Assembly: GCA_943704425.1 (NCBI GenBank)
Contig: CALSCP010000905.1
Coordinates: 62,001-126,000 of the forward strand
Direction of reading: 5' to 3'
DNA: 64,000 bases
Source: Ministeria vibrans ATCC 50519
Taxonomy: Eukaryota; Protista; Filasterea
Position numbers and translations under genes: made by a program. The stretch's first letter is position 1. Every line of letters starts with the position of its first letter. This document shows, one piece after another, positions 8,701 to 55,744 of this stretch. Under the pieces are notes generated by a model. That model worked only from the letters and a program-made list of their open reading frames with translations, was not told the origin of the DNA and did not search any database.

Positions 8701-11700
8701 TTGTGGCGGAGCCTGCGCGGCGGGAACATATCTTTCGCGTGCATGCTCCTCCACTGCCAATCGCCTCTGCTCGCTCTGTACAACGTGTGTGTCGGGAAGT
8801 CAATACGAGACTCGTGCTTGCACTGCGACTCAAAACCGACTGTGCTCTGCGTGCTCGCCGACCTCGTGCGGTGCCAACACCTACCAAACCACTGCGTGTA
8901 CTCCCACGACCAACCGTGTTTGTTCCACTTGTCGCACAACCTGTGCCGCGGGGACGTACGAATCCACAGCGTGCACCAGCACAACCAACCGTGTGTGTAC
9001 TACATGCACTGCTGCATGCAGTGGAAACACCTACCAAACCACTGCGTGTACTGCAACAACCAAGTAAGCGAACCTTTTTGATCAATTTCCATACTAATTT
9101 ATTTACACTGCAACAACAATAATAAGCATAATAATAATAATAATAACATTTGATATAAATTATTTTATTATTATCATTATTATTGTTGTTCTTATTATTA
9201 TAATTATATAATTCATGTCTCACTCGCCATTATTTCTTGTGTGTTTCCTCTCAATTTCAGTCGTGTGTGCAAAACATGCACTGCGTGTGCGTCAAACCAG
9301 TACCAAACGCGAGCTTGTAGTAGCACACTCAATCGACTGTGTGCTCTCTGTGGTGGCACCTGCGGAGCTGGAACCTACTTGAGCTCAGCGTGCACTGCGA
9401 CCGCGGATCGGTAAGGAATTCACGCCCGACCGCAAACAAGACAATTACTTTCTTCTTATCCTATTTTTTTTTTTTGACGTTTCTTTCTTCAAGGGTGTGT
9501 TCCTCATGCACTACGTGCTCCTCCACGCAGTACCAAACGACCGCGTGCAGTGCCACGCAAAATCGCATCTGCGCTACTTGCAGAACGTGTGTAACGGGAC
9601 AGTATCAAACATCCGCTTGCTCTCTCACTGCCAATCGCGTGTGTGCTACATGCTCTACTTGTACCTCTTTGCAGTACCAGACAAGTGACTGCACGGCCAC
9701 AGCAAATCGCGTTTGCGCCACCTGCTCGGTTTGCACAAGCGGCACCTACCAAACGGTCGCCTGTGGTGGCACCCAAAATCGCGTGTGCAAAGCTTGCCGT
9801 ATTGCCTGCACGTCGGGCACGTACGAGAGTGCCTCGTGTACCGCCACAAGCGACCGAGTCTGCTCCACATGCCGTACCTGCGCGGTTGGAACCTACGAGA
9901 CCACCGCGTGTACCGCGAGCACAAACCGCGTGTGTTCTTCCTGTCAGGCCACGTGCGCCAGCGGTACCTACGAGTCAACCGCCTGCACATCCACCTCGAA
10001 CCGTGTTTGCTCCACCTGTCGAGCCACTTGTACTGCCGGCTTCTACGAGTCGACCGCTTGCACGGCAACCACAAATCGAGTGTGCTCCTCATGCATTGCT
10101 TGTGCTAGCGGTCAGTATCAGTCTGTTGCATGCTCCGCAACCCAAAATCGAGTGTGTCTACCTTGCCGCAGTGCTTGCACCGCAGGTACCTACGAGTCAA
10201 CAACATGTTCGTCGACAACCAACCGTGTGTGCTCCACTTGTCGTGGTCCTTGCACTGCGGGCACGTACCAGGTGATCGGGTGCACCCCGACAACGAATCT
10301 GTACTGTGCCTCGTGTCGTTCGTCATGTGGTGCAAACACATATGAGTCGACGGCGTGCACTGCCACGTCGAACCGGGTATGCTCTACCTGCACTGCCGCC
10401 TGTGGTGCAGGTACCTTCGAAACCACTGCCTGTACAGCAACGACAAATCGGGTCTGCACTTCGTGTCGAGCGCCTTGCGGTACGGGCACGTACGAATCGA
10501 CAAGCTGTTCTGCCAGTTCCAACCGTGTGTGCACGTCATGTCGCAGTGCATGCGCAAGTGGCACATACGAAAGCACAGCGTGCACTGCAACCACCAATCG
10601 AGTCTGCTCCAGCTGTAAAACATGCATGGTGGGTCAATTTGCAGCCACTGCATGTACTTCCACCTCTGATACGGTCTGCCAAGGCTGCAGGGCGGCGTGC
10701 TCTGGCGAATATTACGAGTCGACCGCTTGCACAATCTCCTCCAATCGAGTGTGCTCACCGTGCTTGGCCTCTTGTGTTGGAGAGAAATATGAGACGCGCG
10801 CATGCACTTCGACCACAAATCGCGTTTGTACAACATGTACAAGTGAGTGCAGCGGCGAGACGTACGAGACGACGGCATGTTCGAGCACTGTCAATCGCGT
10901 GTGCAGCGCATGTCGAGCCAAATGTGCGACGGGCTATTTTGAGGCGCGCGGATGCACTTCCCTGCTCGACCGTGTCTGCCAAAAGTGCTCCGCTTGCGCA
11001 GCCGGCTACAGTATTCGCGTGGGAACTTGTACAGGCAGTATCGACGCCACTTGCGACGATGTGGCCTCACCCGTCTTCACGTCGTGTCCCTCCAATGTGG
11101 CCGGTGTCACAAACGTGGGCGCCACCGGTACGGTGACATGGGTCGCGCCGGTCGCAACGGATAACTCGGGATCCTCACCGACTATCACTGGCACTGCGAC
11201 TTCGGGTTCGACAAAGTTTCCTCTTGGCTCAACAGGCGTTTCTTTTGTCGCCATCGATGCCGCTGGAAACTCGGCCACTTGTTCATTTACTGTGACTATT
11301 TCAGACAACGTTAAACCTGTGATTAGCGGCTGTCCCTCGTCACGAACGCTAAACACATCACCGGGCGCCAACACAGGCACTGCCTCGTGGACTGCACCCA
11401 CCGCGACCGACAACATTGCAGTGACGTCGCTCACCAGCACGCACTCGTCGGGCTCTGCGTTCCCCGTGTCCGCACCCACAACGGTGACATACACTGCAGT
11501 TGACGCCGCCGGCAACACCGCCACCTGTTCCTTCCCTGNNNNNNNNNNNNNNNNNNNNNNNNNNNNNNNNNNNNNNNNNNNNNNNNNNNNNNNNNNNNNN
11601 NNNNNNNNNNNNNNNNNNNNNNNNNNNNNNNNNNNNNNNNNNNNNNNNNNNNNNNNNNNNNNNNNNNNNNNNNNNNNNNNNNNNNNNNNNNNNNNNNNNN

Positions 11701-14700
11701 NNNNNNNNNNNNNNNNNNNNNNNNNNNNNNNNNNNNNNNNNNNNNNNNNNNNNNNNNNNNNNNNNNNNNNNNNNNNNNNNNNNNNNNNNNNNNNNNNNNA
11801 GCCAACGGTGACGTGTCCGGCCAACATTGCATTGACATCGCAGTCCAACGGCGGTCCCACATCGTCGGTTGCGACCTGGTCTCCCATTGCAACCACAGAC
11901 AACTCGGGCGGTGTCGTGACGGTTACAAGCACATTCGCGAGCGGGGATGCATTTCCTGTCAACGTCCAGACGACAGTGGTTGTAAGCGCCGCCGATCCCT
12001 CTGGAAACGTACAGAGCTGCTCGTTTACCGTAACGGTTGTGGATAATCACCCGCCGGTCATTGAAAACTGTCCAAGCGATCTGTCGGTTGGAACTGACGC
12101 GCAGAACTACTGTTTTGCCGAGTGGGAGGCACCTACGGCATCCGACAACGTGGGAATTGACCGTGTCACTGCGTCCGCAACCTCGGGGTCAACGCGTTTT
12201 GCGCTGGGTGTTAGTGGTGTGCTGATCACCTTTGTTGACGTGAACGAACTAAGTAGCTCGTGCACTTTCAACGTCCTCTGTAACGACAATGCAACGCCTG
12301 TGATCAGCGATTGCCCCGCAGCCCAGTCAATCAACACATCGCCGGGCGCCAACACAGGCACTGCCTCATGGACTGCACCCACCGCGACCGACAACATTGC
12401 AGTGACGTCGCTCACCAGCACGCACTCGCCGGGCTCTGCGTTCCCCGTGTCCGCACCCACAACGGTGACATACACTGCAGTTGACGCCGCCGGCAACACC
12501 GCCACCTGTTCCTTTGNNNNNNNNNNNNNNNNNNNNNNNNNNNNNNNNNNNNNNNNNNNNNNNNNNNNNNNNNNNNNNNNNNNNNNNNNNNNNNNNNNNN
12601 NCGCGGTGGCTCTGAGTGTGGCGACGGCCACGGACAACGTCGGAGTGACGGCCGTGACGAGTGACACTGCGTCGCCAGCGACACTGCCAATTGGCACGAC
12701 GACCATCACCAACACGGCGACTGATGCGGCGGGCCACGCCACATCGTGCACGTACACGGTGACGGTGGTCGACGACGAGAAGCCAACGGTGACGTGTCCG
12801 GCCAGTTGGAGTGTCCCTACAGATATCGACAAGCCAAATGCAGTCGTCACCTTTGCCTGGGCGGCGTTGGACAATGATGCGATAGCTTCTACATCCGCAA
12901 CACCCCCTTCGGGTTCAGTGTTCCCCCTGCACGCCTCCACGGTGAATATTGTTGCAGTTGACACCTCTGGCAATTCTCAAGCCTGCTCCTTTGTGGTGAC
13001 CGTTGAAGATACCCAACGTCCCGATGTGACCAACTGCCCCGAGTCGGTGACGTTGTCAACGGATGTCGGTTTGCCCTCCCGACACGTTCCCATCACGCCG
13101 CCGACCATGTCAGACAATGTTGGTGTCGTGGAAAGTGGTGTTCTGGGTCGCCCCGTCAATGATACATTCCCTCTTGGCTCAACAACAGTCTCCTACGCTC
13201 CCATCGATGCAGCCAGCAACGTCAACAATTCGTGTGTTTTTGTGGTGACCATTGAAGACCGCGAGTCGCCCAAGTTCCCCGCCGGCTGTCCCTCCAACAT
13301 CACCTTGAACACCGATGAAGGTGTTTCGTACGTAGCCAGCGTCCCTTTCAGCACGCCCGCCACGCAGGACAACGTCGCTGTCACGTCCATCACACCGTCC
13401 ATTGCGAGCGGCTCACGGTTTGATTTTGGCACGACCAGTGTCGAGTTTGTTGTCAGTGATGCGGCAGGAAACCAGCAAAGCTGTAGCTTTGCTGTGACCG
13501 TGCTGGACGCGGAGAAACCTTCGATTACTTGTCCCGCCAATATTTTCGTCGACACTGACGTGGGTGTGAACACCAAGGCGGTGAGCTGGGTGCTTCAAAC
13601 CAGCGACAACGTGGCCATGGCGTCGACATCGTCGACTCCCTCGCCAGGCACCATCTTTGACGTAGGACTCACGGTGGTGAACGCCATGGCAATGGACACA
13701 TCAGGCAACAGCGCGAGTTGTTCGTTCCTTGTCACGGTTGCCGACGTTGAGAAACCCACGGTGAGCGGCTGTCCTAAAACTCCCGTGATCCAGATTAGCA
13801 CGAGTGATGCAAGCACCAACGGCAGTGCTGTGACGTGGAGCCCACCGACTGCAGTTGACAACGATGCCATTGCGAGCGCTCAAGTGTCAGCACAGCCCGG
13901 CAGTCACTTCCCAATTGGCACATCAGGCGTGACGTATACCTGGGTGGACCTCAGCGGCAACCGAGCAGTCTGTTCTTTTGAGGTGATTGTCTACGACACT
14001 CACGCGCCCGTCTTTGCAAACTGCCCCACGACAGACTATGTCTTGCTGATCACCAACAGCTCGTCGAGCACCCATCTCTTTGAGGTGCCCAACGTGATCG
14101 CCGAGGATAACACCAACAGTACGCTTTCGTATAACTTTGCACCACACAACTCGGGCGAGCTCGTGGCCCTACCACTCGGCGTGACGCTGTTCAACATTTC
14201 GGCCAATGATGATGATGGCAACACTGCCTGGTGTGTGTTCCGCGTGGACGTCCGCGACCGAGCACCGCCCATCGTGGTCTGTCCACCTTCACAAGTGAAT
14301 GTGACTTCAACGTCGGACGCAAGTGAGACGACTGCGGTGGCCTCGTGGACCGCAGCGACGGCAACCGACAACGACGGTACTCCGCCTGTTCGCACGTCCA
14401 CGCACGAGAGCGGCGATGCCTTTCCCTTGGGTGTCACCAACGTCGTGACGCGCTTTACCGATCTCGCGCAAAACGAAGCTTCGTGTCACATTGTCGTTAC
14501 CGTCTTGGACACGCATGCGCCCGAGTTCACATCGTGCCCCGTCTCGTTCTCACAGGCGACCGATGCCTCGCTCAACACTGCAATCGTGTCATGGTCACAA
14601 GCAACGGCAACCGACAACTCGGGGGTGCTGACGGTGAGCTCGACACACGTACCGGACACAACGTTTGCTCTTGGTCCCACCACTGTCGTGTATACTGCAG

Positions 14701-17477
14701 TGGACGCCGCGGGAACAGTTGCAACGTGTTCGTTCGTTGTGACAGTTGAAGATCGCGAAAATCCGGTGGTGCTCTTCTGCCCGCAAGACATCACGACCAC
14801 CTCGAAGGCGAACGGCGACGATACCTCGAGCACTGTCACCTACACGAGCCCCTCTTTTGCCGACAATGTCGGCGTTGTCTCGGTGAGCCAGACGCACACG
14901 AGCAACGACTCATTTCCACTGGGGCTGTCCACTGTGACCTACATAGCAGCGGATGCGGCCGGCAATCAAGCGATGTGCTCGTTTGCCGTGATTGTTGTCG
15001 ATACGCACGCGCCCGTGTTCACCTTTTGTCCGCTCACGATCCAAATCCCGACGGATCTTCACATGGACACGGCTTCCTTCCTGTGGCCTCTGCCCACGGT
15101 CAGCGACAACGACGCGGTGGTGTCCCTTTCTGCAGTGGACTACCCCGAGCCCAGCGGGATCTTTCCTCTTGGTCAGTCTCCTGTGGTGTACGTTGCTGTT
15201 GACCGGTCGGGCAACACTGCCTCGTGTAGCTTTGTGGTGGAGGTATTTGATGACGAACCCCCTCGATTTGTGGCATGCCCCGGAGCTATTACGGCTCTCT
15301 CCACATCAGACGCGGACACCCAGGGAGCACAAGTGACGTGGGATGTTCGGGCAACCGACAACGTCGAACTTGCAACATTGACCGTCTTCCCGCCCATGAC
15401 CACGACCTTTTCCATTGGCACGACGGCAGTTACAGCGATCGCTGTTGACACTGCAAGCTTGACAACCACGTGCGAGTGGACCGTGTCCATTCTGGATTCG
15501 CATGCACCAGTGTGGGCAAACTGTCCCAAAGACATTGCGGTGGACAATGATCTAGGCGGTATCGTAGCCAACGTCACTTGGCCAGCGCCCACGGTCGCTG
15601 ACAATGTTGCGGTGGCGGAGACTCGTCTCACGCCGAGCTCTTCGGTGTTTTCGCCGGGTACCACTGCAGTGGTCTACTGGGCCGTTGACGACGCTGGCAA
15701 CGAGGCTCTCTGTCAGTTTACAGTGACGGTGACGTTGGTGAACCATGCCCCCGTCTTCGTGACAAACTCGGACGCCTTCTCGGTCGACGAGAACGCTCCC
15801 GGTGGACAGATACTGACAGGCTCGCCTGTGATTGCAACCGACGTTGACTTTAACCAGGAGCTGCTTTTCTCGATCACCGGCGGATTGGGCGCGAGCGCCT
15901 TTTCAGTGGACCAGCGCACGGGCGCTCTGCAGGTGAGCGGCATTGCGGATCTCGACTACGAGGTGCAATCGCAGTACGTCATTGAGTTGACCGTGACCGA
16001 CAATGGGCTTCCCGCGCCACAGGCAGCCTCCAAAACCTTTACCATTGATCTGGTCAACGTCAACGATGCGCCTGTACTCACTTTCAGTCGCGATATTGCC
16101 TTTGACTATGCTGCCACCCACACGAACATGCTTGTGGCGACGGCAACCATGTTCGATGAAGACGGGCCGCACAAGCAAGAGCTTCTTCTTGAACTCGAAG
16201 GACCAGATGCAACGCGCTTTGTGCTGAACGTGACGTCAAACAATGCCGGGCATGTCACTGCCCCCGCGCGACTGCCCATTGGCGAGTACCGTTTGGAGGC
16301 GTCGTTGACTGACGTGCCTGTTCGCTCCGACTGGCTTCCCATCTCGGTGCAGAAGCACGTTACCGTGGCGGTGCGCGCGAGCATCAAACTGGGTGCCGAG
16401 CTGACCGAGAATGACTGTGCTGCTGTGCTTCATGCCGATACCAATGCCACTTTTGCACTGCCGCTCCTTGAACAGTTCTATGCGACACTTGGCCTGCCAC
16501 CTGGCTCCATTGACGCCGTCGAGGTGCTTTGTGGGGCACAACGCCGTCGCGCTGGCGCCAACGAGCCACCAGTTGTTGTCCTCAATCTGCCAGTGCTCCC
16601 GTCTCCTGTGGACATGTCGCCGGAAGCCCTTTCGGCGCTTCTTCAAAATGCCGTGAGCAATGGCACGTCTCCCTTCTTCAACAGCACGTTTGTGACCGAC
16701 CCAAGCCAGATCCGGCTCTTCTTCATAAGCTCCACAGCGCCCGCGGCAGCATCGTCGTCGTCGTCGTCGGCGTCGGTGAGCATTGGCATTGGCGCAGGAG
16801 TCGGCGTAGCCATTGTGCTGGTCGTTGTGATCCTACTTGTCTATCGCCACGGCCGAACAACCAAGTACAGCAGTCGGTCGGCCGCGAGCACGCACCAGTC
16901 GCTGGCGGGCTACCCAAGCACCTCTTCGACTGCTGCAGGTGGCTCCAAGCCCGTCGAGGGACTGGGCGCGTATCTACTGCAGGAGCATGGTCTTGAGATT
17001 GATACGGGCGACGTTGAAGACTTTGTGGCGAGTCCAAAGACGGGCCATGAGGTTGGCGAGATGGATGACGACTTCTTCATGGAGCCTGACGTGTGGCGCA
17101 CCGTGACGGCGTCCAAGGCGTCGTCGCACTCGTCGTTCTGGGTAAACCCCATCCTGTTCCTCGACGACGCGCCCGTGGGCGAGTCCACCGAGCTCTCCTC
17201 CTTCGACGCAGCGCCCGTCGGATCCCATCTCACGCGACGCGCCACGCTGCTCGAGTCGTTGAGCAAGTCGGGCTCGCTCTTCCTCGGCAACGATTTCCCC
17301 GCCACTCGCACTGCCAACGACGACGACGCCGACGACGCCACCCATGCCGCCTACCCCAACCACCCCGACCACAGCGACACCGACGACGATGACAACTTCC
17401 TGGCCGACGACGACGACGACGACGACGCCGAGGATCCCAACTTTCTCGTCGACGACGACGACGACGACCAGCTCTAG
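5780..17477 (+). CDS. Giant type I transmembrane protein (>3000 aa): signal peptide, 4 N-terminal Cys/Tyr-rich modules, about 30 TNFR-like Cys repeats, about 19 HYR domains, cadherin repeat(s), TM helix, acidic cytoplasmic tail
   Basis: MISTLLLVVICLGREVAA signal at 5780. Many small GT-AG exons at 5780-8160. CxxCxxxCxxGxYExxxCTxxxNRVC repeats at 8355-11060. HYR repeats (PxxxxCP...ATDN...FPxGxTxVxYxAxDxxGN..xCxFxVxV) at 11060-15740. Cadherin domain NHAPVF...SVDENA...ATDVD...LDYE...VTDNG...VNVNDAP at 15740-16075. TM IGIGAGVGVAIVLVVVILLVY at about 16780-16845. Stop at 17477. Confidence 0.9.
6790..7918 (+). repeat. Near-identical intragenic duplication of exon-intron-exon block (6790-7000, 7495-7708, partial 7806-7918)
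   Basis: Near-identical sequence including the intron 'gtattcaagacaaaagttcaacaagacactctaattgtctcacgtcattcatttt'. The third copy flanks an N gap. Confidence 0.85.
11353..12514 (+). repeat. Near-identical duplicated HYR-coding segment (11353-11533 and 12334-12514)
   Basis: The NTSPGANTGTASWTAPTATDNIAVTSLTSTHS..GSAFPVSAPTTVTYTAVDAAGNTATCSF unit occurs twice, near-identical at the nucleotide level. Each copy is followed by an N gap. Confidence 0.9.
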
Positions 17478-45149: not shown

Positions 45150-48099
45150 ATGTCATTTGTCAAAAAACTCAAACGGCGCAGCGCCATAGCGGCCGCGGCG
45201 TCTGCCGCTGCTGCGGCCGAGAGCGAGCTTCGCGAAGATCGTTTCGAACGAAACTTACAAGGTCCCATCACATCCCATCCCATCACGGCCCTTCCGCCTC
45301 TGACGCACGCTGTGTAGAGTTCTCCTTCCTTGAGAGCTCCACAGGTCGCCTTGAAGCGGCCATCGAGGGCTTTCTGACGGCGACAGAGGAGATGGCAAAA
45401 AGCACAGCAAAACTTGGCGATGAGTTCCTCGCCAACTTCCACGGGACGCCTCTGTGGGAGCTGTGCATCCGGGAGCATGTAGTGCTGGACCAGCTGCGCC
45501 AAGAACAACTAAAGCTGTCCAAGTATATGAAGCAGACGGTAAGTTTGTGTGTTCTTAACTTCATTCCCATATTTCCTTGTCGTTTTCTTTTTTCTCTTTT
45601 TCCCCTCTCCTTCTCATTTCTCATTCTTTGTAGGTTCTTGCGCCCATTGCATACTTTACGTCACTCATCGACGAGCCGCGCCAGCTGATGACGGAGTGTA
45701 TGGCGCTCAAGAAGGGGGACATGGCGTCAAGCGACGCACTCAGTCGGCTTACGGCCAAACAGACTGACTTTGACGCACTGGTGACGCGCCTGCGCGAGCG
45801 ACGCGTCCAAACGGTCGGGCCGTGTGTGCCGCTCTTTATGCAAGGCAAAATGGAACTGCTTCGAGCCAGTCTTGGCGTCGTCTCGCCCTTTTGCGATGAA
45901 TTTGTCTCTCGTTGCGACTTCCTTCGCGAGGACACCCAGTCCAAAGCCGTCTCGCACGCCACCATCGACTGGCTCTCGGCTGCCAGTGGGGTTTCACGCG
46001 AACCCGATGGCAACACTCTGATGGGTTCTCGACAACCGCACGAGCATCACATTGATTCGTTCACGACAACTCCTGGCGGTATTCATCGACGCCGTGTGCT
46101 CACCGATGCCGACTTGAACGACCTCATTTCCCTTCAGAAGAACAAACGCCTATCCTCCTCTTCCTCATCATCTAACAACAGCAACAACAACAGTCGCAGC
46201 AGCATCAGCAACAAGGTGCTGTTACCACCAAACGAAATGGACTCACGCAAGCGCTCGTCGAGCTCTCATCGTCTCGAGAAAATGCGCTCACTCGACGCAA
46301 AGCTTCGCGAGGAAATCCACCTGTTCTGCACACGTCTCGACGCCCTTGACGGACCTCCCCAGCACCCACATACGCATGAAATTCGCACGGGGTTTGCATA
46401 CAATGTGGCTGGAATGGATTTGGCGTTGCGTGACTGTGTCAGTGATGGGGAGCGCAAACTGGCAGTGCAGTTGTTTGCACAGTCGCTCAACGATCGCACT
46501 GTGATGAAGGCACGACTGGCAACGGATCTTCCACGGCAGCGCATGACCATTGGCACACGGTCGTTTGCACCGGTCGTCTCCGACCGAGAGCGCACTGCCA
46601 ATGCTCAGGCGAAGGTGCGTGCGGCGTGGGCACTGCTCGCCGAGCACAACGCAGCCCTTGTAAGTGCATCCGAGTCTAACCATAGACAAAGCGCCGCTCT
46701 CGATCACTATCTTGTCTCACTGCTTCACGAGGCAACCACCTCGGTTGCCCTCAACTCGTGCCGTGTGGCCCTTCAGCTTCTTGTGGGTCTACGTGACATT
46801 GTCTATGTGCGTCCTCTCTCGTACGATCCCACAGTGCGCACTGATCTGCAGTTTGACGGTCCCACTGCGCATCTTACCGTCACCATGGCATGGGAACTTA
46901 CCGAAGACGCGCGCCAGAATGCCGCCGTTGGCCGCCCTACCGACGCCAAGAGCCCCACAGCCCCACTCGCCATGTACGACACTTCCTTCTCTCTCTCGTC
47001 CAACCTGGAGCACTACCTTCGTCTTCACTCCGAATCCACTACGCCACTGAGTCGAAGCAGTAGTTTCAACTGCGTTACCACAGCTGGCAGCAGCAGCAGC
47101 AGCAGCAGCATCAGCAGCAGCAGCACGCCCAGCGCCGCCTCCACCTTTCTCCTTGCAGCCGTCGACGGACTTCCCATCGTGCGCATCACTCGTCGCCACC
47201 AGCGCACAAACCCACTTCACGAGCAAGAGATGCTCACTCAACTGCGCGCCTCCGAAACTTCCACTACCCCGATTCCCGTCGCCTCCTATGCTACCGCAGT
47301 GCGTCGCTCCTTTGAGTCTGACTCCAACGATGAAAGCAACAGCAACGCCAACCGCGACTCGCCTGTCTTCTCCCCTCCCACACAGCCTCGCCCCTCCCTC
47401 CTTCCTTCCCCAATCCTTCCTTTCTCCTCTTCCTCCACATCAATATCCTCCGCTGACATTGTTGCCTTTTCCGCTTCCCTTCCAATGTCCACTACCTTCC
47501 CAACAACAGCCCATGTCCCGCAACCACAGTCACAGTCACAGCCACAGTCACAGTCACAGCCACAGTCACAGTCACATTCACAATCACAGTCACAGTCACA
47601 GTCACAATCACAGTCACAGCCACAGTCACAGTCACAATCACAGTCACAGCCACAACCACAGCCACAGCTACAACTACAGTCACAGCTACAGCTACAGTCA
47701 CAACCACAGTCACAACCACAGTCACAGCCACAGCTACAGGCTCCCTTTGCAACCATTCCCCTTCCCGCTCCCTTCAATCCTCTCTCGGCCCTTCCCATGT
47801 TTCAACCGCACACTGCCCCTCCTCCACCCTTCCCTGCCTCTACCACTCCCTCCTCCCTTCCCGCCTTTGACTCTCTCCCTCCACTCCCCACCTCTCTCCC
47901 TCAATCCGCCACAATCCACACTCCAATCGACCCTATGCAGCTGCTCTTCACCTCCATACCCGCTCCAACTCCCTCTCCTCCCGCAACAAGCACAACTCCG
48001 ACATCATCCGTCAATGTCGCCTTGCGTGACATTCTCGAGGCCCCCATCGACCAAATACCCTCCATTTCATCCATTCAGTTGCGCGAATCCTTTGAATAA
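45150..48099 (+). CDS. Uncharacterised protein: N-terminal helical (BAR-like) domain, unknown central domain, QS/Pro-rich tail
   Basis: Three exons join in frame. EDRFERNLQ|EFSFLESSTGRL...EEMAKSTAKLGDEF...YMKQT|VLAPIAYF resembles BAR helices. Long exon runs to TAA at 48099. Confidence 0.55.
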
Positions 48100-48212
48100 G
48101 AATTGCGAATCCTTTGATAATATTTAGTATGATAATTGTACAAGCACATGATTATTCATTAATAATTTGTTATTAGTACTTCTTTGCAAACTGTAACGAG
48201 TAACGCACTCCA

Positions 48213-51200
48213 ATGCCTGTCGGCCTGGGAAACGCACAGCGCAAGATCTGCCTGATCCTGTACGCGCTGGGCGGCGAGCAGTCCGGCGTGCCCGTTTCCG
48301 CAGTGCGTCTCGAAAAGGAGCTCCTCGAACGATTCAAACTGCGCCTCAAAACGCTCAACGGGATCTTGCGCCACGAAGGCAAAGACACCGTTGAGAGACA
48401 GTCGACGGATCTCTTTGTGGTACGCCTCGGAAGCCGCACAATGCCCATTTCCATCGAATTCACCGAAACGAATTTCTTTTTTGTATCATTTCTCTGAAAC
48501 AGACATCGGGCTCTACGACTGCCACGACGTACACACTAACACCCGAGGGTGTCGCCGTTGCCCTGCGGGCCCTTGCGAAGGAGAAGAACCCCAAGCTCGC
48601 AATGCAGAAGAAGAATATCGCGGGACTGTTCGCAATGGCAGACAGCACAAGCACAGGCGCAAACGCAAACCCAAACGCAAACTCAAACGCGAACGCAGAC
48701 GCAGACGCAGACGCAGACACAGACGCAGACGCAGACGCAGACGCACACTCGGCGCCATCGACGGCCGCGCCGACCCCGCCGACATTGTCGCGAGACGACG
48801 CGGCTCAATTGCAGCGTGCGGGTAGCGCTGACGCAGCAACCAGCGGCAGTGCTAGCGGGAGCATGACAACAGTCGACGCTGCTGCTGCTGCTGCTGCTTC
48901 TTCTTCTTCTTCTTCTTCTTCTTCAGCCACAGTTCCATTTCTCACGCGTGCCAGTAGTAATTCTTCTCCGACACCTGTTGCCACAGCACCCACTTCCGGT
49001 GCAATCCCGACCACCTCAACCGCAGTCCCGTTTCTCACACGTGCTGGTAGTACTCCTTCTTCTACTACACCTGTTGCCGCAGCACCAACGGCCGACAAGT
49101 CTCCCAAGGAAAAGACCAAGGCGACAAAGGAAAAGCCAGCCAAGCTGAAACGCAAGGACTCCACCTCAATACTTATGGAAAAGGCGCTCTACATGCTACA
49201 GCGAAACCTCACAGGCTCATCGACAGTGCAATCGATGGAGCGCACCCTGTCCCGCAACACTCATCTGGCACAGGTTATCCCGGCTATTGCAAAACACTAC
49301 GGCTCCTTCCAGAACTTCTTGATGCTCCACGGCGACAAGGAATTCACTATAGAGGAGCCGTCCAAGCGCGTCCGTGTCAACGTTACCCCACACCGTCTCT
49401 TCCGTCGTGTTTTCTCGCACCTTTTTGTCTATGGTGGTCCCGAACGCGACCCCATTTCCGTCAAACACGTCTTTGGCGTTGTCTTCAACGAAATGAGTGA
49501 CTTGCGCCCCTTTGCCCGCTCCGAAGTCGACCAAATCGCCTTCCTCCAGAAACACCCTTTTATCTTCCACCTCTCCGCCAACAACACCGCCGTTGCGCTC
49601 ACGCGCACTGCCATTGCCCAACGCGATCCCAAAGTCTTCTCCACTGCCATTACACCGTCCGCATCTTCCAAACCCACCGCGGCGACACCGGCATCAACAA
49701 AAATAGCTGCAGTAGCAGGAGTACCAGCGGTACAAGCGGCACCAGCAGCAGCGACTCCCGTTGTTGCCCTCGAGACCACCAGGGAACTCTCCTTCTCCCC
49801 TCCTCCGCCAAAGCCGCACTTTCCCCCTTCGATCAAACCCGTGTCATCTTCTACTATCGCCACCACATCTTCTACTTCCACTACAACTACTACAACTACT
49901 CCACCACCACCCCACCCACTTGTACCCTCTTCTTCCTCTCCCACGCAGCCACAGTCACAGTCTCAACCACCACCAGGCGTTGTTGTTATCGACTCTCTCT
50001 CTGCATCTCGTACTAAAAGCAACACAAGAAACCCCCCATTATTCTGCCATCTGTCTCAAAACGGGTTTCTTTCTTCTTTTTTTCTTTTTCAGGCCAAATT
50101 GTGCACGAGCACCTTCTCAAAAGCACTCGGGTGACACTGTCGTACACGATAGCCCCACACCACAACACCTCTACTACAGCTTCTGCAGTCCCGTGTTTGG
50201 CCGCCGTGCACGTTGGTGTCGACCACACCAACACTGTCTATGTCTTTGATGTGCTCTCCTGCGGTCGTTGTCTCTTTGTCAATGATAATTCGGGTGGGGC
50301 ACTCTCTCTTCTATTGGCTTCATCTCAAGTTGTACGTTTCATCTTTATACCATGGCATGTTGGTGGTGTGTACTCACACATTGTTGTGGGCGTTGCAGGT
50401 TAAAATCGTCCACGACTGTCGAGCACTGTCGCATATGCTTTTCTACACATATGCCACGGTGCTTCGCTGTGTCTTTGACACCCAAATCGCCCACCATTTT
50501 ACTCAACTCTGCCCACCAGATTCACCCACCACACAAACCAATCTCGCCATGAATACCACAACAACAACAACAACAACAACAGCAACAACTAGTAGTAGTA
50601 GTAGTAGTACTACTGTTGCTGGTGCATCCAATCCTGACGCCGTTCTTGATCCTCTGCTGGATTTCTATTCGACACTCTCTGCGTATACACTCAAAAGGGG
50701 GAACACATATTTCTCCCATATTTTTCCACGCACACACACACACACTGACTCTCCCTCCCTTTCATTTATTCTCTGATAGGCATGGAATGAGCAGTTCGGC
50801 TGAGCAACTGCGCATCATTGACTCCGAGTGCGACAGTGACCCTCTAATGTGGCTCAAACGTCCTTTTTCCATCGCACTACTCAAAAGGATTCGTCTAGAA
50901 ATGCTCATTACGGTACACACACTTCTACCAAGTTACTGTTGTATACCAAAAATATGTTTAATTCATGCCAATCGTGCAAACCCTAACAATCATTCGCTCA
51001 TTTCTTTAATAATCAGTCGGTCGTCCATTCATTTCTCCACAACCGTTATTTCACTCATTCATATTATAGCTCTTTCACACTGCTTACTTCCCCTCTGCTT
51101 GCTTACCCACAATCTATCGCTTAGACTTCCCTTTACAACTGGCTACACCCCTTTGCGTCTCTTCATCGCGACGCATTTGATCTCTGGTGCGATCGCCATT

Positions 51201-51729
51201 TGAACCTCAACAGAAAATTTGAAGTAACCTCCCCCCGAAAAAAAAAGATTAGGTTTCAAATACTTTTTTTTGGCACAATGTCTGTTTTGTGCAATAGGAA
51301 TTCTTTGTGTCGTTGCGACTGTTTGAGGGCGAATCTATCGTGTTGCCGTATTCAGAGGATCTTTCAACTCAAAACACTTTGGAAATGGCGCAATCAGCCT
51401 TTCAACACTCAATTGACCGTTTGAAACAGGTTGGAAATCACACAACCAGAATCGTTTCAAACTTAACGCTTGCTTGCATTTATTTCTTTCTCCTTCAGAT
51501 TCTTCCAAATGCTCTGTCTGACTCTCTTGATCATCTCGAGCCAAATTGTGTTGAGCAGGTCACACAAACACACCCTCAATTACCAATCCTAATTTTGGTC
51601 GTATTTCGTGTAGAATCTGATGAAGATTGTGATGAAAAATGGCTCCACGACAAAACTTATTTTGAGAACAAACGACGCAAACGAGTAAGATATTAAAAAT
51701 AATAATAATAGAAAAATAAATGTATGTAT

Positions 51730-51775
<46 letters not shown>

Positions 51776-51812
51776 TTATAATATTATAATTATTTTTATA
51801 ATAATAATAATA

Positions 51813-51853
<41 letters not shown>

Positions 51854-53213
51854 CATTAATAGTTATAATAATAATTATTATTATTATTATTATTATTTTC
51901 ATCATTATTAATTTTATTATTCTCCTTATCGTACTGGTTGTTCCATTTAGGTTTAGTATATCAGCTCGTTCATTGGATGAAGGAGGTGTATTTACGCAAG
52001 AGACACTGCGGAGTGTGCGGGATAATCCGGTGGTCTTGGGCGCACGCACTGGCACAGCGGGCACCAGTCGTGTGTTGCACATCAACGGGACTCTCCATAC
52101 CATTCAGGTGTGACGGCTTTCTTTGTTGACTTTCTCCCTCCTGTTTCTCTCTCACACATATCCATCTCTGTAGTCGGCTGAGTTTGCCAATGGAACCATT
52201 CAGAGTCTGACCATTCTGATACAGCGTTGGATTCATCAAACGTCGCAGATTGTGTGTGATCATCTCGTTCCGTCTGTGCGTCCACAGTCAACCGACTCCA
52301 TTCTTATTTGCGGCGCTCCACTCAGCGGCAAAACCACTCTGTACACCGCACAACATCAGCAATGACGTACATTCACCTAAAAAAAACGCTCATTCCCCGT
52401 CTCTTGTTTAGTCTTCGCGATCTTGTACGCTCCGTTTCGTCGCAAGCAGGCGCAGCGCTGCGCGACACGTGCATCATTGACACGCTGGGCACTCTCTGTG
52501 GGGATGCGCACCCTCACCCCTTTTGTGAAAATGTCGCTTCCGTCGTTCAGGTCACAGCGCCCGAAAACCAACCGAAGGTTAGCAAATGTCGCACATGTCA
52601 CACCACACGGCTGCTCTTTTTGTAACCCCACCTATGCTTTTGTTTACTTTGTTTCGTTAGGCGATTCGCAATTTGCTCAGCTCTCAAGCGCCGCACACTC
52701 TCATTGTCGGCTCAGTGTTGACGCACGAAGATGTGTCTGCACTCTGTGCGGCACGTCAGAAAGGAATCAGAGTCATTGCGATTGTGCCCGTCGACACACT
52801 GTAAGTGTATCTGCCGCATGTTTTTCTCACTCAACGCATCACAAACTATGATTAGATACCGTTTGGCTCACACAGCTGTATACCATCCTCTGCTGGGTCT
52901 CTCTGTTACATCCTCTTCCATCACTCCTCCTCCCCCTACGCAACTGCGCCAGACAGGCTCTGTCCTCTTCAACACGGTTGTACAAACTCTTTCCCCCAAT
53001 CGAGCCAGTACGATTCACAATCAAGAAAGAAAGACCTGACTGTCGTTGTTTTTCTCTTTTTTTTTCGATAAACTAGTTGTCATGAGTCCCTTTGCGCTTT
53101 ACCTCTCATCGCTCATTCTCAACACTTCATGCACTGCCGAATTACGTGTGAACAAACCCCAACTCTCACTTGTTGAATGTACCGGTGTTTCAGTGGGCCC
53201 TGAACAACAATAA
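48213..53213 (+). CDS. Fusion protein: three winged-helix/LOTUS-like domains, EXD1/Egalitarian-type 3'-5' exonuclease-like domain (inactive) and ycf45/SpoIIIAA-like P-loop domain
   Basis: 15 GT-AG exons join in frame: 48213-48419, 48503-50009, 50093-50331, 50399-50682, 50780-50912, 51125-51223, 51298-51429, 51499-51558, 51614-51684, 51951/51957-52107, 52174-52340, 52412-52577, 52661-52800, 52856-53007, 53077-53213. Motifs: YVFDVL, KIVHDCR, VFDTQIAH, WLKRPFS, INGTLHTI, SILICGAPLSGKTTLLRD, IIDT...GDAHPHP. Confidence 0.75.
51731..51897. repeat. (TAA)n/(TTA)n microsatellite intron, including head-to-head inverted arrays
   Basis: Direct trinucleotide runs; a similar array lies at 55722-55812. Confidence 0.95.
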
Positions 53214-53264
53214 GAAAATAAAAATCTAATACAGATTTTGAAACCCAAAATAATCGTGCTAGCT

Positions 53265-55744
53265 TCAATTGGTGAAATCGTGATCCGTGTGAAGATCAAG
53301 CGAGTCGATGACGGTTCCATTAAACGAGTCGATGAGAGACCAGCGCATATCAGTGGAATTGAATATGTCAACGCGACCGTACGCGTACACCTGCAGAAGA
53401 GAGAGAACACGCGCGTATAAATGGAAGGATGCAACAAAAAAAAAACATTGTTTGTTTTTTGGTGTGGTACAGTTGGGAAGCGAACAAGGGACCAGTCCTC
53501 TTTGTAGTAATTGGGAGTGTCAAAAGCAATGCCAGCAGTGCCCACCGTGATGTGGACAGTCGCCTGGGGCTGGCCGGTTGCCTGTGATTCGCGACATGTG
53601 TTGTTGTACACAGGACAAGTGCGCTCATAGCTGAAGTCAAAGAGAATGCAATCGAGTGAGAGATAGTAAATATATATATATATGTAAAAAAAACGAGAGA
53701 TAGAGGGAAAGGAAGAGAAAATTATGTGTGTACGAGTGGTAATGGCCGGCGGTAAACACATCCACATTATACTGCTGCAGGAGATCGCCAATGATGCCCT
53801 GGAGTGCAACGGCAACATTGAAATCACTTTTGTCCTACAGAAAAAGAAAGAACGAGAGAGAAAAAAAAAAAAAAAGAAGAAGAAGACGTAACAAAATGCA
53901 AAATGGAGGAAAAACAGAAGGATGAATGAGTACGATTGTAGTTCAAAGGATAGGAGATACTGTCGTACTGCTTCCGAGCAATACACAGGTCGGTGTGCAC
54001 CCATAAAGAGCCAAGGAGTCACAGAGCGATCCACGGACTAACAGATACAGAAACAGTGTGTGTGTGTGTGTGGTATCAATATTTTTGTTTTTGTGCTTGT
54101 TTACCTTGAGATCATTTTCAAGCCAGGCTCGCTGAGCAGAGCCAACTTCAAGCGAATGCTCAATGGAAATAACAATGTAATGCACCGATTGTTTCTGACC
54201 GAGAGTTTTACAAAAAATGTGAGAGGAAAGAAAATAGCACTCTTAATTATTGGAAAACTGTGAAACGTACCTCAAAAGAATACCAAAACAGTGAGTTTCC
54301 AGTGTCAGGCACATGAAATCGATTGAACATCTTAAATCAGAGAGAGAGATACAAAGTGATAGAGAGAGAAAGAAAGAAACAAAGAGAGAGAGAAAAATAT
54401 GAGAAAAAACGGAAATATGTTATAATCATACCGGAACAGCACATTCGCCATCAGAGTCATCACCCATGTCACCCCAACCGGGATGGTAGCTATGAAGAGG
54501 AGCGGAAGATGAGTGGTGAGAGGGAGATGATTTTACACCAAGCTCCTCGGGTTGAGCTCGGGTTAGGGTTAGGGTTACGCTAAACGGGCCATATGAGCTG
54601 CTCTTACCCGTTGTCAGTGGGTGCTCCAGAGGGATCCTTGCCCTTTCCGCCCTTCAAGTGATCATATTCGTGGTTTCCAATCGAAACCAAGTCTGCAATA
54701 AAGAAGGAGACGTTAAATTCCGTACTAGAGACTTGTTTTTGGTTCTGACAGGGAATTTTGGAAGCAATTGGATAAATTGTGTCAAAAAACACATCCCACT
54801 TCAGCGCAGTGTTTCGCGCATACGAAATGTCCCCCTCATGCACAATAAACTACAAAAAACACCCAATATTAGCAATATGACTTATTTGTATCTTCCTTAT
54901 TTGTACCTCTGGTGGATTTTGACCTGTTTTGAGTTCGCGCTTCTCAATCTGTGAGACGAGTGCCTGTGCGCCCGGTCCGTACGACTGTGTCTCGTGGATT
55001 GCACACGACGCACAGAATTCCTTGGCCGTTCCCATATCTATTCATAAAAAAAACACACACACACACCAAAGACATCAGATTGTTGCTTTTCCCTTTTTTT
55101 CTTCCTTTTCTTTGTACCAGCGTAAATGAGAAAAGAAAAAGGTTTTGACGGATCTTCGGTGGCCGTTTGAAAGGTCTCAGGGGCCGTCCAAAGGTCATCG
55201 GCTCCTGCGACATAAGTGTACACCTGAAAGACAATTAATGATATGTGGGAGATTCTATTTAAGTATGTACAATATACCTCTCCGGGTTTGAGACCAGTCA
55301 GTAGAACGTCGTGGATCCAGCCTGGAGGCACCCATGCCACGTCGTTGATTGGTGAAGCCTAAAATAACAATAAGACGAAATATTATTACTTGAGAGTGTG
55401 CCACTGAGTCGTACTTCACAGAGATCCTCTTGCGAATAGGTTTTCGACGTGCCCTGCGCCATCTGGTCCATCTCGCCATTCAGTCCAAAACGCACGGTTG
55501 GAGGACTCTCGGGGCGGCCCGAGACCCACATGACGCGCATTTCAGAGGGATTGGCAGTCAGGGCAATGTGCAGTTGTGTGGGTTCAAGATTTCCATGCAC
55601 AAACGTCACTGGCGGCGAAATGGCCAATGGAGACGACATGTGGGTTTTGGCAGTACTAGGGTAGTACCAGAATGTGCTAAACAAACCGAAAAACGAAAAG
55701 TATAGATTATTAAGAAAACTATAACAATAATAATAATAATAATA

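What the first reader, a model, noticed from the sequence alone, without database searches (positions are those of the whole stretch)
48213..53213. Hidden 15-exon fusion: LOTUS/winged-helix array, Egalitarian/EXD1 pseudonuclease and ycf45/SpoIIIAA-type P-loop NTPase
Seen: the ORF track shows only fragments, but canonical splicing gives one continuous frame. It has a wHTH-like N-terminus (TYTLTPEG wing) and two LOTUS/Egalitarian-like helical units (YGSFQNFLMLH..EFTI; IAFLQKHPFIFHL). An EXD1/Egalitarian-type exonuclease fold follows (KIVHDCR, VFDTQIAH, WLKRP), then a region colinear with ycf45/SpoIIIAA (IDRLKQILP, LMKIVM, GTLHTI, GAPLSGKTTLLRD, IIDT...GDAHPHP, RQKGIRVIA). Known: Egalitarian and EXD1 are animal RNA adaptors (dynein/BicD mRNA transport; piRNA biogenesis), while ycf45-type ATPases are bacterial/plastid-type and poorly characterised. 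Inference: a nucleotide-binding RNA adaptor or granule scaffold in a probably unicellular holozoan, possibly an ancestral or alternative form of the Egalitarian/EXD1 module. I recall exonuclease-ycf45 fusions among unannotated protist and fungal proteins but cannot confirm this.
Basis: partly seen in the sequence, partly recalled or inferred. Interest (0 to 1): 0.85.

Follow-up and report, generated by a model that had tools for sequence, protein, structure and literature searches.

The report
Egalitarian-like exonuclease–ATPase double pseudoenzyme gene
This is a real, expressed 15-exon gene of a marine opisthokont protist whose 1216-residue protein joins an Egalitarian/EXD1-type exonuclease-like domain to a SpoIIIAA/ycf45-type P-loop domain. 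Both domains have lost their catalytic residues, while intact sister genes in the same genome keep theirs.

Summary
Spliced, polyadenylated RNA-type contigs from two studies show 13 of the 14 GT..AG coding introns directly. The fourteenth (51685-51950) follows from contig-length arithmetic. The result is one 3651-nt frame (1216 aa) from ATG 48213 to TAA 53213. The TAA at 51686 is intronic.

Searched exon by exon, the gene belongs to a catalogued but unstudied eukaryotic family. That family fuses a 3'-5' exonuclease (PF01612) to a SpoIIIAA/ycf45 ATPase (PF19568). Colinear exon matches to a family model sum to 32-34 bits, against at most 5.5 in 300 shuffles.

The same genome has two sister genes with intact motifs, on contigs C2679 and C2085. 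The family's exonuclease is closest, among solved structures, to Drosophila Egalitarian (E=8.6e-37). Window exon 4 alone finds Egalitarian and EXD1 first.

In the window gene all five DEDDy positions are substituted. In the ATPase part the Walker B Asp-Glu pair has become Gly-Ser, and Walker A is kept.

The LOTUS/winged-helix reading of exon 2 stays below threshold (WH_Egal E=0.024).

The non-catalytic RNA-binding or regulatory role is inference. The scan also noted this gene in two other first-reader notes, which agree.

The parts
48177..48419 (+). Exon 1. ATG at 48213, 69 codons, the putative first half of an N-terminal wHTH. A 5'UTR intron 48127-48176 is spliced in X3 and retained in X1.
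   Evidence: joints 48126>48177 and 48418>48502 (cut +1).. No Pfam hit.
48503..50009 (+). Exon 2 (1507 nt). It starts with TYTLTPEG, then runs through Ala/Asn/Asp and Ser/Thr/Pro-rich low-complexity stretches. Two putative winged-helix/LOTUS-like units lie at 49133-49375 and 49376-49642.
   Evidence: pieces (X3 record 15: 48935-50009, then 50093). WH_Egal PF23713 E=0.024 on unit B. Atlas first hit is a WHD_Egal cluster, score 0.89, 180 shared features. No hit in 1.84 billion representatives.
50093..50331 (+). Exon 3, the start of the exonuclease-like domain. The ExoI Asp-x-Glu is absent: the first 34 residues hold no Asp and one Glu.
   Evidence: Family model positions 350-390, 3.0 bits. Sequence.
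50399..50682 (+). Exon 4, the ExoII region VKIVHDCRAL...VFDTQIAH. The catalytic Asp is replaced by Leu. A Thr/Ser-rich loop insertion follows.
   Evidence: The top PDB hits are Egalitarian 9uju_C (E=1.1e-3) and EXD1 5fiq (E=3.6e-3). Family model positions 393-428, 10 bits.
50780..50912 (+). Exon 5, SDPLMWLKRP and the ExoIII region. YAAxD has become RIRLE (Tyr to Arg, Asp to Glu).
   Evidence: Alignment to the family and the C2679 paralogue. tblastn to the paralogue E=7e-4.
51125..51223 (+). Exon 6, a linker after the exonuclease-like domain.
   Evidence: Joints 50911>51124 (cut +1) and 51223>51298 in X1, X3 and X5.
51298..51429 (+). Exon 7, a linker that ends in IDRLKQ.
   Evidence: Joints.
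51499..51558 (+). Exon 8, ILPNALSDSL. It matches the family's 'LPksLadaL' at the start of the ycf45-like module.
   Evidence: family model positions 601-612. The match is weak but colinear.
51614..51684 (+). Exon 9, NLMKIVMKNGSTTKL, which corresponds to the family's 'vvDvGr' strand. The TAA at 51686 is intronic.
   Evidence: (family model positions 627-635).
51685..51950 (+). Intron 9 (266 nt, GC about 0.23). It is filled with AAT/ATT microsatellite. A second AG at 51955-56 would give an in-frame alternative acceptor at 51957.
   Evidence: Contig-length arithmetic favours acceptor 51951.
51951..52107 (+). Exon 10, ...LHINGTLHTIQ, which corresponds to the family's 'tLHRIS' motif.
   Evidence: hhalign places it at A1 columns 673-681, E=0.18.
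52174..52340 (+). Exon 11, ending in the intact Walker A motif GAPLSGKT.
   Evidence: Family model positions 691-737, 9.7-11.2 bits. tblastn to the C2085 paralogue E=2.8e-4.
52412..52577 (+). Exon 12, CIIDTLGTLCGDAHPHP. This is the family's 'VVDTSNEIAGDG..H' motif with Ser-Asn-Glu lost.
   Evidence: hhalign to A1 columns 749-771, E=0.058..
52661..52800 (+). Exon 13, the Walker B region. The family has 'VlVvDElgt'; here it reads TLIVGSVLT, so the Asp-Glu pair is lost. RQKGIRVIA follows.
   Evidence: Family model positions 797-830, 9.3-11.8 bits. tblastn to the C2085 paralogue E=0.003.
52856..53007 (+). Exon 14, the C-terminal part of the ATPase-like module (HPLLGLSV, SVLFNTVVQ). No significant match.
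   Evidence: Joints. hhalign finds nothing. Colinearity is judged by eye only.
53077..53250 (+). Exon 15. The stop TAA is at 53211-53213 and the poly(A) site at about 53250.
   Evidence: joint 53007>53077 and a loose A-run behind 53250 in X3.

Best explanation
Shown:
- Window 48213-53213 (+) is one transcribed, spliced and polyadenylated gene of 15 coding exons that encodes 1216 residues.
- It is a divergent paralogue of a eukaryotic family that fuses an Egalitarian-type DEDDy 3'-5' exonuclease domain to a SpoIIIAA/ycf45-type P-loop ATPase. Short helical N-terminal units precede the exonuclease.
- The same genome holds one intact full-architecture sister gene (contig C2679) and one intact sister gene without the exonuclease (contig C2085).
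- In the window gene the exonuclease-like domain has lost all five DEDDy positions. ExoI Asp and Glu are absent. ExoII Asp is Leu, as in EXD1. ExoIII Tyr is Arg and ExoIII Asp is Glu.
- The ATPase-like domain keeps Walker A (GAPLSGKT). Walker B Asp-Glu has become Gly-Ser, and the family's DTSNEIAGDG and ARR motifs are degraded.

Inferred:
- The protein cannot cut RNA or hydrolyse NTP.
- It probably acts as a non-catalytic RNA-binding or regulatory subunit. The exonuclease-like domain and the putative winged-helix units would hold RNA, as in Egalitarian and EXD1.
- The P-loop module may still bind nucleotide or co-assemble with the intact sister ATPases. SpoIIIAA-type ATPases are taken to work as oligomers, on general knowledge that was not tested here.
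For: Gene model.

Family membership:
- A model built from 10 fusion proteins hits exons 3, 4, 5, 8, 9, 11, 12 and 13 in strict colinear order.
- The colinear chain scores 32.0-33.7 bits, against a maximum of 5.5 in 300 shuffles.
- hhalign places exons 10 and 12 in register.

Paralogues:
- PF01612 and PF19568 hit the same strand of C2679.
- C2085 has PF19568 without the exonuclease.
- Each paralogue has an intron just after GKTTLL, 4 nt from the window's exon 11/12 junction.

Egalitarian link:
- Exon 4 finds Egalitarian and EXD1 as the first PDB hits.
- The family profile hits Egalitarian at E=8.6e-37, ahead of T. brucei RNase D (1e-24), RRP6 and EXD1.

Lost residues: using the Egalitarian catalytic numbering from bioRxiv 10.1101/2025.08.03.668247.

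Constraint: the frame is open across 14 introns, and the three exonic variants seen (49615, 52472, 52744) all fall on third codon positions and are synonymous (my reading).

Precedent: Egalitarian binds RNA with its catalytic residues mutated, and EXD1 is an inactive RNA-binding exonuclease fold (same preprint; PMC13186709).
Against: - Pfam models PF01612 and PF19568 do not reach E<=1 on any single window exon, and they miss the locus in the six-frame genome search. Membership therefore rests on a home-made family model and on short exons.
- The winged-helix/LOTUS units are below threshold. They have no detectable relatives: none in 1.84 billion representative proteins at E<=0.001, and no PDB match beyond one chance-level hit at E=2.1. 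They show no similarity to the paralogues' N-termini.
- No RNA-binding, oligomerisation or nucleotide-binding data exist.
- Only three polymorphisms support purifying selection.
- No ortholog from another species was found, so conservation of the degenerate state cannot be judged.
Confidence: 0.7

Rival explanations
1. The protein is a dynein/BicD-type mRNA transport adaptor, or a piRNA-like granule scaffold, that works as animal Egalitarian or EXD1 does.
For: The exonuclease-like domain is most similar to Egalitarian and EXD1. There is a sub-threshold WH_Egal signal. The architecture parallels Egalitarian's three wHTH domains plus ExoHD (PMC13186709).
Against: The six-frame genome search found no BicD (PF09730) and no WH_Egal hit, although the genome is fragmented and such a blank is weak. 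Egalitarian has no ATPase module. The N-terminal units show no sequence similarity to Egalitarian's. The sister genes point to an enzyme family, not a transport adaptor.
Confidence: 0.1
2. The P-loop module is still an active NTPase or nucleotide switch that uses non-canonical catalytic residues. Only the nuclease is dead, and the protein is a working motor or remodeller on RNA.
For: Walker A, GAPLSGKT, is intact and followed by the family's TLLRD. Several family motifs are partly kept: IIDT, GDA.H and RQKGIRVIA.
Against: Walker B Asp-Glu has become Gly-Ser. The SNE of DTSNEIAGDG, the ARR motif and the ATAHG motif are all lost (and the sequence).
Confidence: 0.12
3. The gene is a redundant duplicate drifting towards loss. 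It is transcribed but has no function of its own.
For: Divergence from the paralogues is extreme, both active sites are lost, low-complexity insertions are long, and no ortholog was detected elsewhere.
Against: A 1216-codon frame stays open across 14 correctly spliced introns. The transcript is polyadenylated and seen in two studies. All three observed exonic variants are synonymous. Walker A and many structural motifs are kept.
Confidence: 0.08

Closest known systems
Unnamed eukaryotic exonuclease-SpoIIIAA/ycf45 fusion family. Examples are P0002, P0006, P0008, P0009, P0012, P0014 and P0067. It also includes an ESM Atlas cluster, mostly oomycete, that carries PF19568, PF00004 and PF01612, and the paralogue on contig C2679 of this genome.
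   Same: The domain order is the same: N-terminal helical units, an Egalitarian-type exonuclease fold, a linker with 'LPxxL', and a SpoIIIAA-type P-loop module. Matches are colinear exon by exon, and an intron lies next to the Walker A motif.
   Different: All DEDDy residues, Walker B and other ATPase motifs are lost. An extra N-terminal region and about 400 residues of low-complexity sequence are added. The N-terminal units are not alignable. The protein is 1216 aa, against about 620-1125 aa in the family.
Drosophila Egalitarian (PDB 9rvy, 9uju; PMC13186709)
   Same: It is the closest solved relative of the exonuclease-like domain. Exon 4, VKIVHDCR..VFDTQIAH, aligns with Egalitarian's IKVIHDCR..VFDTQAAH. 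Winged-helix units precede the exonuclease fold in both. Egalitarian's RNA binding does not need catalysis.
   Different: Egalitarian keeps D561, E563, D621, Y704 and D708, and it has a tetrahelical domain after the ExoHD. It has no ATPase module. It binds BicD and dynein light chain, and no BicD was found in this genome.
EXD1 (Bombyx mori, PDB 5fiq/5fis)
   Same: It has an inactive exonuclease fold. The ExoII Asp is replaced by Leu in both (HDCRKL in EXD1, HDCRAL here). It is the second-best PDB hit of exon 4.
   Different: EXD1 is a small animal piRNA-pathway protein without winged-helix units or an ATPase. The family profile scores it far below Egalitarian (6.5e-9 against 8.6e-37).
Bacterial and plastid Ycf45 / R3H-SpoIIIAA ATPases (PF01424 + PF19568 + PF25516), for example P0015-P0060
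   Same: The P-loop module has the same motif order: LHRIS, RVGR, GxxGxGKTTLLR, VDTSNEIAGDG, Walker B and ATAHG. A nucleic-acid-binding domain is attached to the ATPase.
   Different: The attached domain there is R3H, not an exonuclease fold. Those proteins keep their catalytic motifs. The function is unknown in either case, and no solved structure matched the ATPase part.

Membership tests
Exonuclease-SpoIIIAA/ycf45 fusion family (unnamed) | Colinear sequence similarity across both modules | tested here: met
   Exons 3, 4, 5, 8, 9, 11, 12 and 13 hit family-model positions 350, 393, 471, 601, 627, 691, 741 and 797 in order. The chain scores 32-34 bits, against at most 5.5 in 300 shuffles.
Exonuclease-SpoIIIAA/ycf45 fusion family (unnamed) | Both modules lie in one polypeptide | tested here: met
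   Single RNA contigs in X1, X3 and X5 run from exon 4 to the poly(A) tail, and X3 record 15 links exons 2 to 4.
DEDDy 3'-5' exonuclease, Egalitarian/EXD1 type (PF01612) | Pfam model match above the cut-off | tested here: not met
   PF01612 gave no hit at E<=1 on exons 3 to 5, and the locus is absent from the six-frame PF01612 hits. The exons are short (44-94 aa) and the joined protein was not searched.
DEDDy 3'-5' exonuclease, Egalitarian/EXD1 type (PF01612) | Sequence similarity to solved Egalitarian and EXD1 exonuclease domains | tested here: met
   For exon 4, Egalitarian (E=1.1e-3) and EXD1 (E=3.6e-3) are the first hits among 177,635 PDB sequences. The family profile hits Egalitarian at 8.6e-37.
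DEDDy 3'-5' exonuclease, Egalitarian/EXD1 type (PF01612) | Catalytic Asp, Glu, Asp, Tyr and Asp | tested here: not met
   ExoI: there is no Asp-x-Glu in exon 3. ExoII: Egalitarian D621 aligns with Leu. ExoIII: YAAxD has become RIRLE.
SpoIIIAA/ycf45 ATPase (PF19568) | Pfam model match above the cut-off | tested here: not met
   No hit at E<=1 on any of the exon pieces tested, including exons 10 to 13. The locus is not among the six-frame PF19568 hits, while both paralogues are.
SpoIIIAA/ycf45 ATPase (PF19568) | Walker A P-loop | tested here: met
   GAPLSGKTT aligns with the family's GpPGsGKTT.
SpoIIIAA/ycf45 ATPase (PF19568) | Walker B hhhhDE and the DTSNEIAGDG and ATAHG motifs | tested here: not met
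   TLIVGSVLT stands against the family's evlVvDElgt. IIDTLGTLCGDA stands against VVDtSnEiAGDG. IAIVPVD stands against vAtahg (and the sequence).
LOTUS/OST-HTH (PF12872) or Egalitarian winged helix (PF23713) | Profile match above the cut-off | tested here: not met
   PF23713 scores 15.6 bits, E=0.024, against a cut-off of 27, on 49376-49642 only. PF12872 gives no hit. The genome-wide six-frame search with PF23713 is blank.
LOTUS/OST-HTH (PF12872) or Egalitarian winged helix (PF23713) | Winged helix-turn-helix fold | tested here: inconclusive
   The single-sequence AlphaFold model has pLDDT 47, with helices and one hairpin in unit A. The N-terminus of the paralogue model is also below 50. The Atlas first hit is a WHD_Egal cluster at 0.89 with 180 shared features, which is a lead only.
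Egalitarian-BicD transport adaptor | A BicD partner and a BicD or dynein light-chain binding region | tested here: inconclusive
   No PF09730 match in the genome by six-frame search, but the controls were also blank and the genome is fragmented. Binding motifs were not tested.

The most novel reading that the evidence does not exclude
The winged-helix plus ExoHD module of animal Egalitarian descends from an older, widespread eukaryotic protein in which the same module is fused to a SpoIIIAA/ycf45-type ATPase. This fusion is seen in oomycetes and in this opisthokont. On this reading animals lost the ATPase. This unicellular lineage kept an active copy and also evolved a double pseudoenzyme copy that binds RNA or regulates its active sisters without catalysis.
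Probability: 0.3. Interest if true: 0.75.

Novelty: new variant of a known kind. Interest (0 to 1): 0.6.

Why it matters
Egalitarian is a leading model for how motors select mRNAs, and its origin outside animals is not described in the papers I could search. This locus shows that its exonuclease-homology domain belongs to a broader eukaryotic family that is fused to a SpoIIIAA/ycf45-type ATPase of unknown function.

One genome offers a natural series: an active full fusion, an ATPase-only form, and a doubly inactivated form. That series makes two questions testable. What does the ycf45-type ATPase do on RNA? And how did an RNA enzyme become a non-catalytic RNA adaptor?

The locus is also a clear case where ORF-level annotation hides a 1216-residue protein.

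Tried and rejected
- Exon-wise Pfam gave only a weak WH_Egal hit.
- phmmer of the exon 2 winged-helix region against 1.84 billion representatives gave 0 hits, not even the gene itself.
- A JGI metagenome scan with the same region was blank.
- The PDB search of that region gave only a chance hit. Exons 3 and 5 against the PDB gave nothing useful.
- The single-sequence AlphaFold model of 49133-49642 had pLDDT 47, so no fold search was run on it.
- The AlphaFold model of the C2679 paralogue, made with a 9-sequence alignment, was confident only for the exonuclease domain. Foldseek on it cannot separate Egalitarian from RNase D and RRP6.
- phmmer of the window's N-terminal units against the family N-termini gave nothing significant.
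- hhalign of exon 14 gave nothing.
- HSP90 loci for taxon placement were full of N runs, so PABP was used instead.
- Literature searches for ycf45 or SpoIIIAA together with exonuclease gave 0 papers.
- I rejected two separate genes with a stop at 51686, because the contigs read through. I rejected a second genomic copy, because the gene is single-copy.
- All searches used exon references.

Full report
**Observation**

The ORF list shows only fragments between 48213 and 53213. GC content drops to 0.23 around 51500-52000.

I laid Logan contigs of four public runs on 48100-53300. Three runs from two studies behave as cDNA: X1 and X3 from study P1, and X5 from study P2. They carry GT..AG joints at the following places:
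- 48419>48503, 50331>50399, 50682>50780 and 50912>51125
- 51223>51298, 51429>51499, 51558>51614 and 52107>52174
- 52340>52412, 52577>52661, 52800>52856 and 53007>53077

The pieces of X3 record 15 add 50009>50093. An A-run follows 53250. The DNA run X10 has none of these joints.

The joint over the AAT-repeat intron (51684>51951) is not listed, because repeats were skipped. In X5 record 19, however, exactly 289 nt lie between the pieces that end at 51426 and start at 52172. X1 record 4 gives the matching figure. This fits exons 51499-51558, 51614-51684 and 51951-52107, and it excludes acceptor 51957.

All 14 introns are GT..AG. The exon lengths sum to 3651 nt. Each in-frame piece is free of stops, and the six split codons are sense codons. 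The TAA at 51686 is intronic.

Two stretches of coding repeat, 48642-48934 and 50548-50625, are not bridged by any contig. Continuity there rests on the open frame alone.

**How the protein was searched**

Everything below is exon by exon, by reference.

**What it is**

Pfam on single exons gave only a weak WH_Egal hit. The decisive lead came from searching the window's own genome (G000, 29.7 Mb).
- PF19568 (Spore_III_AA) and PF01612 (3'-5' exonuclease) both hit the same strand of contig C2679, about 1 kb apart.
- PF19568 also hits contig C2085.

Reading those loci gave two sister genes:
- **C2679** encodes two short helical N-terminal units and an exonuclease with intact VDCEG, HDVRAD and YAAMDV. 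It then carries a ycf45-type module with GPPGVGKTTLL and Walker B VIVIDEV.
- **C2085** encodes one such N-terminal unit and the same ATPase module, but no exonuclease.

A database search from the C2679 ORF and then from its best hit P0002 found a family of PF01612 + PF19568 fusion proteins from JGI and Logan assemblies. It also found the bacterial R3H-SpoIIIAA proteins. The ESM Atlas returned a cluster with the same fusion, mostly from oomycetes.

I built a model from ten fusion proteins and searched the 15 window exon pieces separately.

| Window exon | Family-model positions | Score |
|---|---|---|
| 3 | 350-390 | 3.0 bits |
| 4 | 393-428 | 10.0 bits |
| 5 | 471-478 | below zero (weak) |
| 8 | 601-612 | below zero (weak) |
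| 9 | 627-635 | below zero (weak) |
| 11 | 691-737 | 9.7 bits |
| 12 | 741-771 | -0.1 bits |
| 13 | 797-830 | 9.3 bits |

The order is perfectly colinear. The best of 315 shuffled or reversed controls scored 1.2 bits. The best colinear chain scores 32.0 bits, or 33.7 bits with the paralogues added. The maximum in 300 whole-gene shuffles was 5.5. hhalign places exon 10 (LHINGTLHTI against tLHRI) and exon 12 (IIDTLGTLCGDA against VVDtSnEiAGDG) in register.

Both paralogues have an intron directly after GKTTLL. The window's exon 11/12 junction lies 4 nt upstream of that point. The gene is single-copy. I conclude that it is a divergent third member of this family.

**The Egalitarian connection**

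Exon 4 alone, searched against all PDB sequences, finds Drosophila Egalitarian (E=1.1e-3) and Bombyx EXD1 (E=3.6e-3) as its first hits. A profile of the family (alignment A1) ranks the solved structures as follows:
- Egalitarian, E=8.6e-37
- T. brucei RNase D, 1e-24
- RRP6, 2.5e-13
- EXD1, 6.5e-9
- Mut-7/Nibbler, 2.7e-5

By structure alone the paralogue's exonuclease domain does not separate these groups. The ATPase part has no solved relative.

Recent papers describe Egalitarian as three LOTUS-like winged-helix 'Egl domains', an exonuclease-homology domain and a helical adjacent domain (PMC13186709). Its catalytic D561, E563, D621, Y704 and D708 are intact but dispensable for RNA binding and function (bioRxiv 10.1101/2025.08.03.668247).

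**Catalytic state**

In the exonuclease-like domain:
- Egalitarian D621 aligns with Leu in the window protein (HDCRAL). EXD1 has the same change (HDCRKL).
- The first 34 residues of exon 3, where Asp-x-Glu should lie, contain no Asp.
- The ExoIII motif YAAxD reads RIRLE.

In the ATPase module:
- Walker A is intact (GAPLSGKT).
- Walker B Asp-Glu has become Gly-Ser.
- The family's DTSNEIAGDG, ARR and ATAHG motifs are degraded.

Both modules therefore look catalytically dead. This agrees with two other first-reader notes of this scan (s1-764122 and s1-765539).

**The N-terminal units**

- The second unit (49376-49642) scores WH_Egal E=0.024, 15.6 bits, against a cut-off of 27.
- The Atlas's first hit for 49133-49642 is a WHD_Egal cluster at 0.89 with 180 shared features. 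OST-HTH clusters come lower in the list.
- There is no PF12872 hit and no PDB hit.
- There is no relative among 1.84 billion representatives or in JGI metagenomes.
- There is no similarity to the paralogues' N-termini.
- The AlphaFold models are unreliable there.
- The split N-terminal wHTH (exon 1 plus the start of exon 2) cannot be tested without joining exons.

**Host**

The window also encodes a 2712-aa protein with 17 HYR domains, TNFR repeats and a cadherin domain, and a PABP. The PABP's best full-length matches, at 53% identity or less, are animal, fungal and Sphaeroforma proteins and the EukProt entry 'Opistho-2'. Seawater runs hold small parts of the locus. The host is therefore an opisthokont, and a marine unicellular holozoan is plausible. 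I do not name it.

**Mechanism**

Shown: one mRNA, family membership, the loss of catalytic residues and the retention of the P-loop.

Inferred: the protein is a non-catalytic RNA-binding or regulatory member of the family. It may bind nucleotide and may assemble with its intact sisters.

Evidence for constraint is the open 1216-codon frame across 14 introns, expression in two studies, and three exonic variants that are all synonymous. A BicD/dynein adaptor role is not supported, since no BicD was found, although that blank is weak.

**Novelty**

The domains are known, and databases already hold the fusion under automatic names. I found no paper on it. A 2009 paper lists YCF45 homologs in Phytophthora and Naegleria and none in Monosiga (PMC3087521).

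Two things appear to be undescribed: the doubly inactivated paralogue, and the specific link between this family and Egalitarian's exonuclease domain.

Noticed in passing
G000:C2679 (L012:4804-7426, minus strand): This is the sister gene with intact motifs. It has two N-terminal helical units, a DEDDy exonuclease (PF01612, E=1.5e-14) and a SpoIIIAA/ycf45 ATPase (PF19568, E=5e-9). One intron follows GKTTLL. A run of N follows its 3' end.
   Followed up: yes
G000:C2085 (L013:3398-5149, plus strand): A second sister gene. It has one N-terminal helical unit plus an intact ycf45-type ATPase and no exonuclease domain. Its intron position after GKTTLL is the same as in C2679.
   Followed up: partly
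window 53236-53250: The gene's poly(A) site is at about 53250. T-runs that end before 53236 in X1 and X5 suggest that the convergent minus-strand gene (ORF 53099-54034) is polyadenylated there. The two 3' ends would then overlap by about 15 nt.
   Followed up: no
window 48127-48176: A 50-nt GT..AG intron in the 5'UTR is spliced in X3 but retained in an X1 contig. That contig runs on upstream towards the neighbouring gene, which ends at 48099.
   Followed up: no
window 51685-51957: This intron is almost wholly AAT/ATT microsatellite. Two AG acceptors lie 6 nt apart (exon starts at 51951 and 51957), and both are in frame. The contigs use 51951.
   Followed up: partly
window 9339-17477 (+): A 2712-aa open frame with 17 HYR domains, TNFR cysteine-rich repeats and one cadherin domain. 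This combination is typical of unicellular relatives of animals.
   Followed up: no
window 49133-49642: The exhaustive search of 1.84 billion representatives returned no hit at all, not even the window's own ORF, although the paralogue's ORF is in the related collection (P0001). The blank may partly reflect what the library holds.
   Followed up: no
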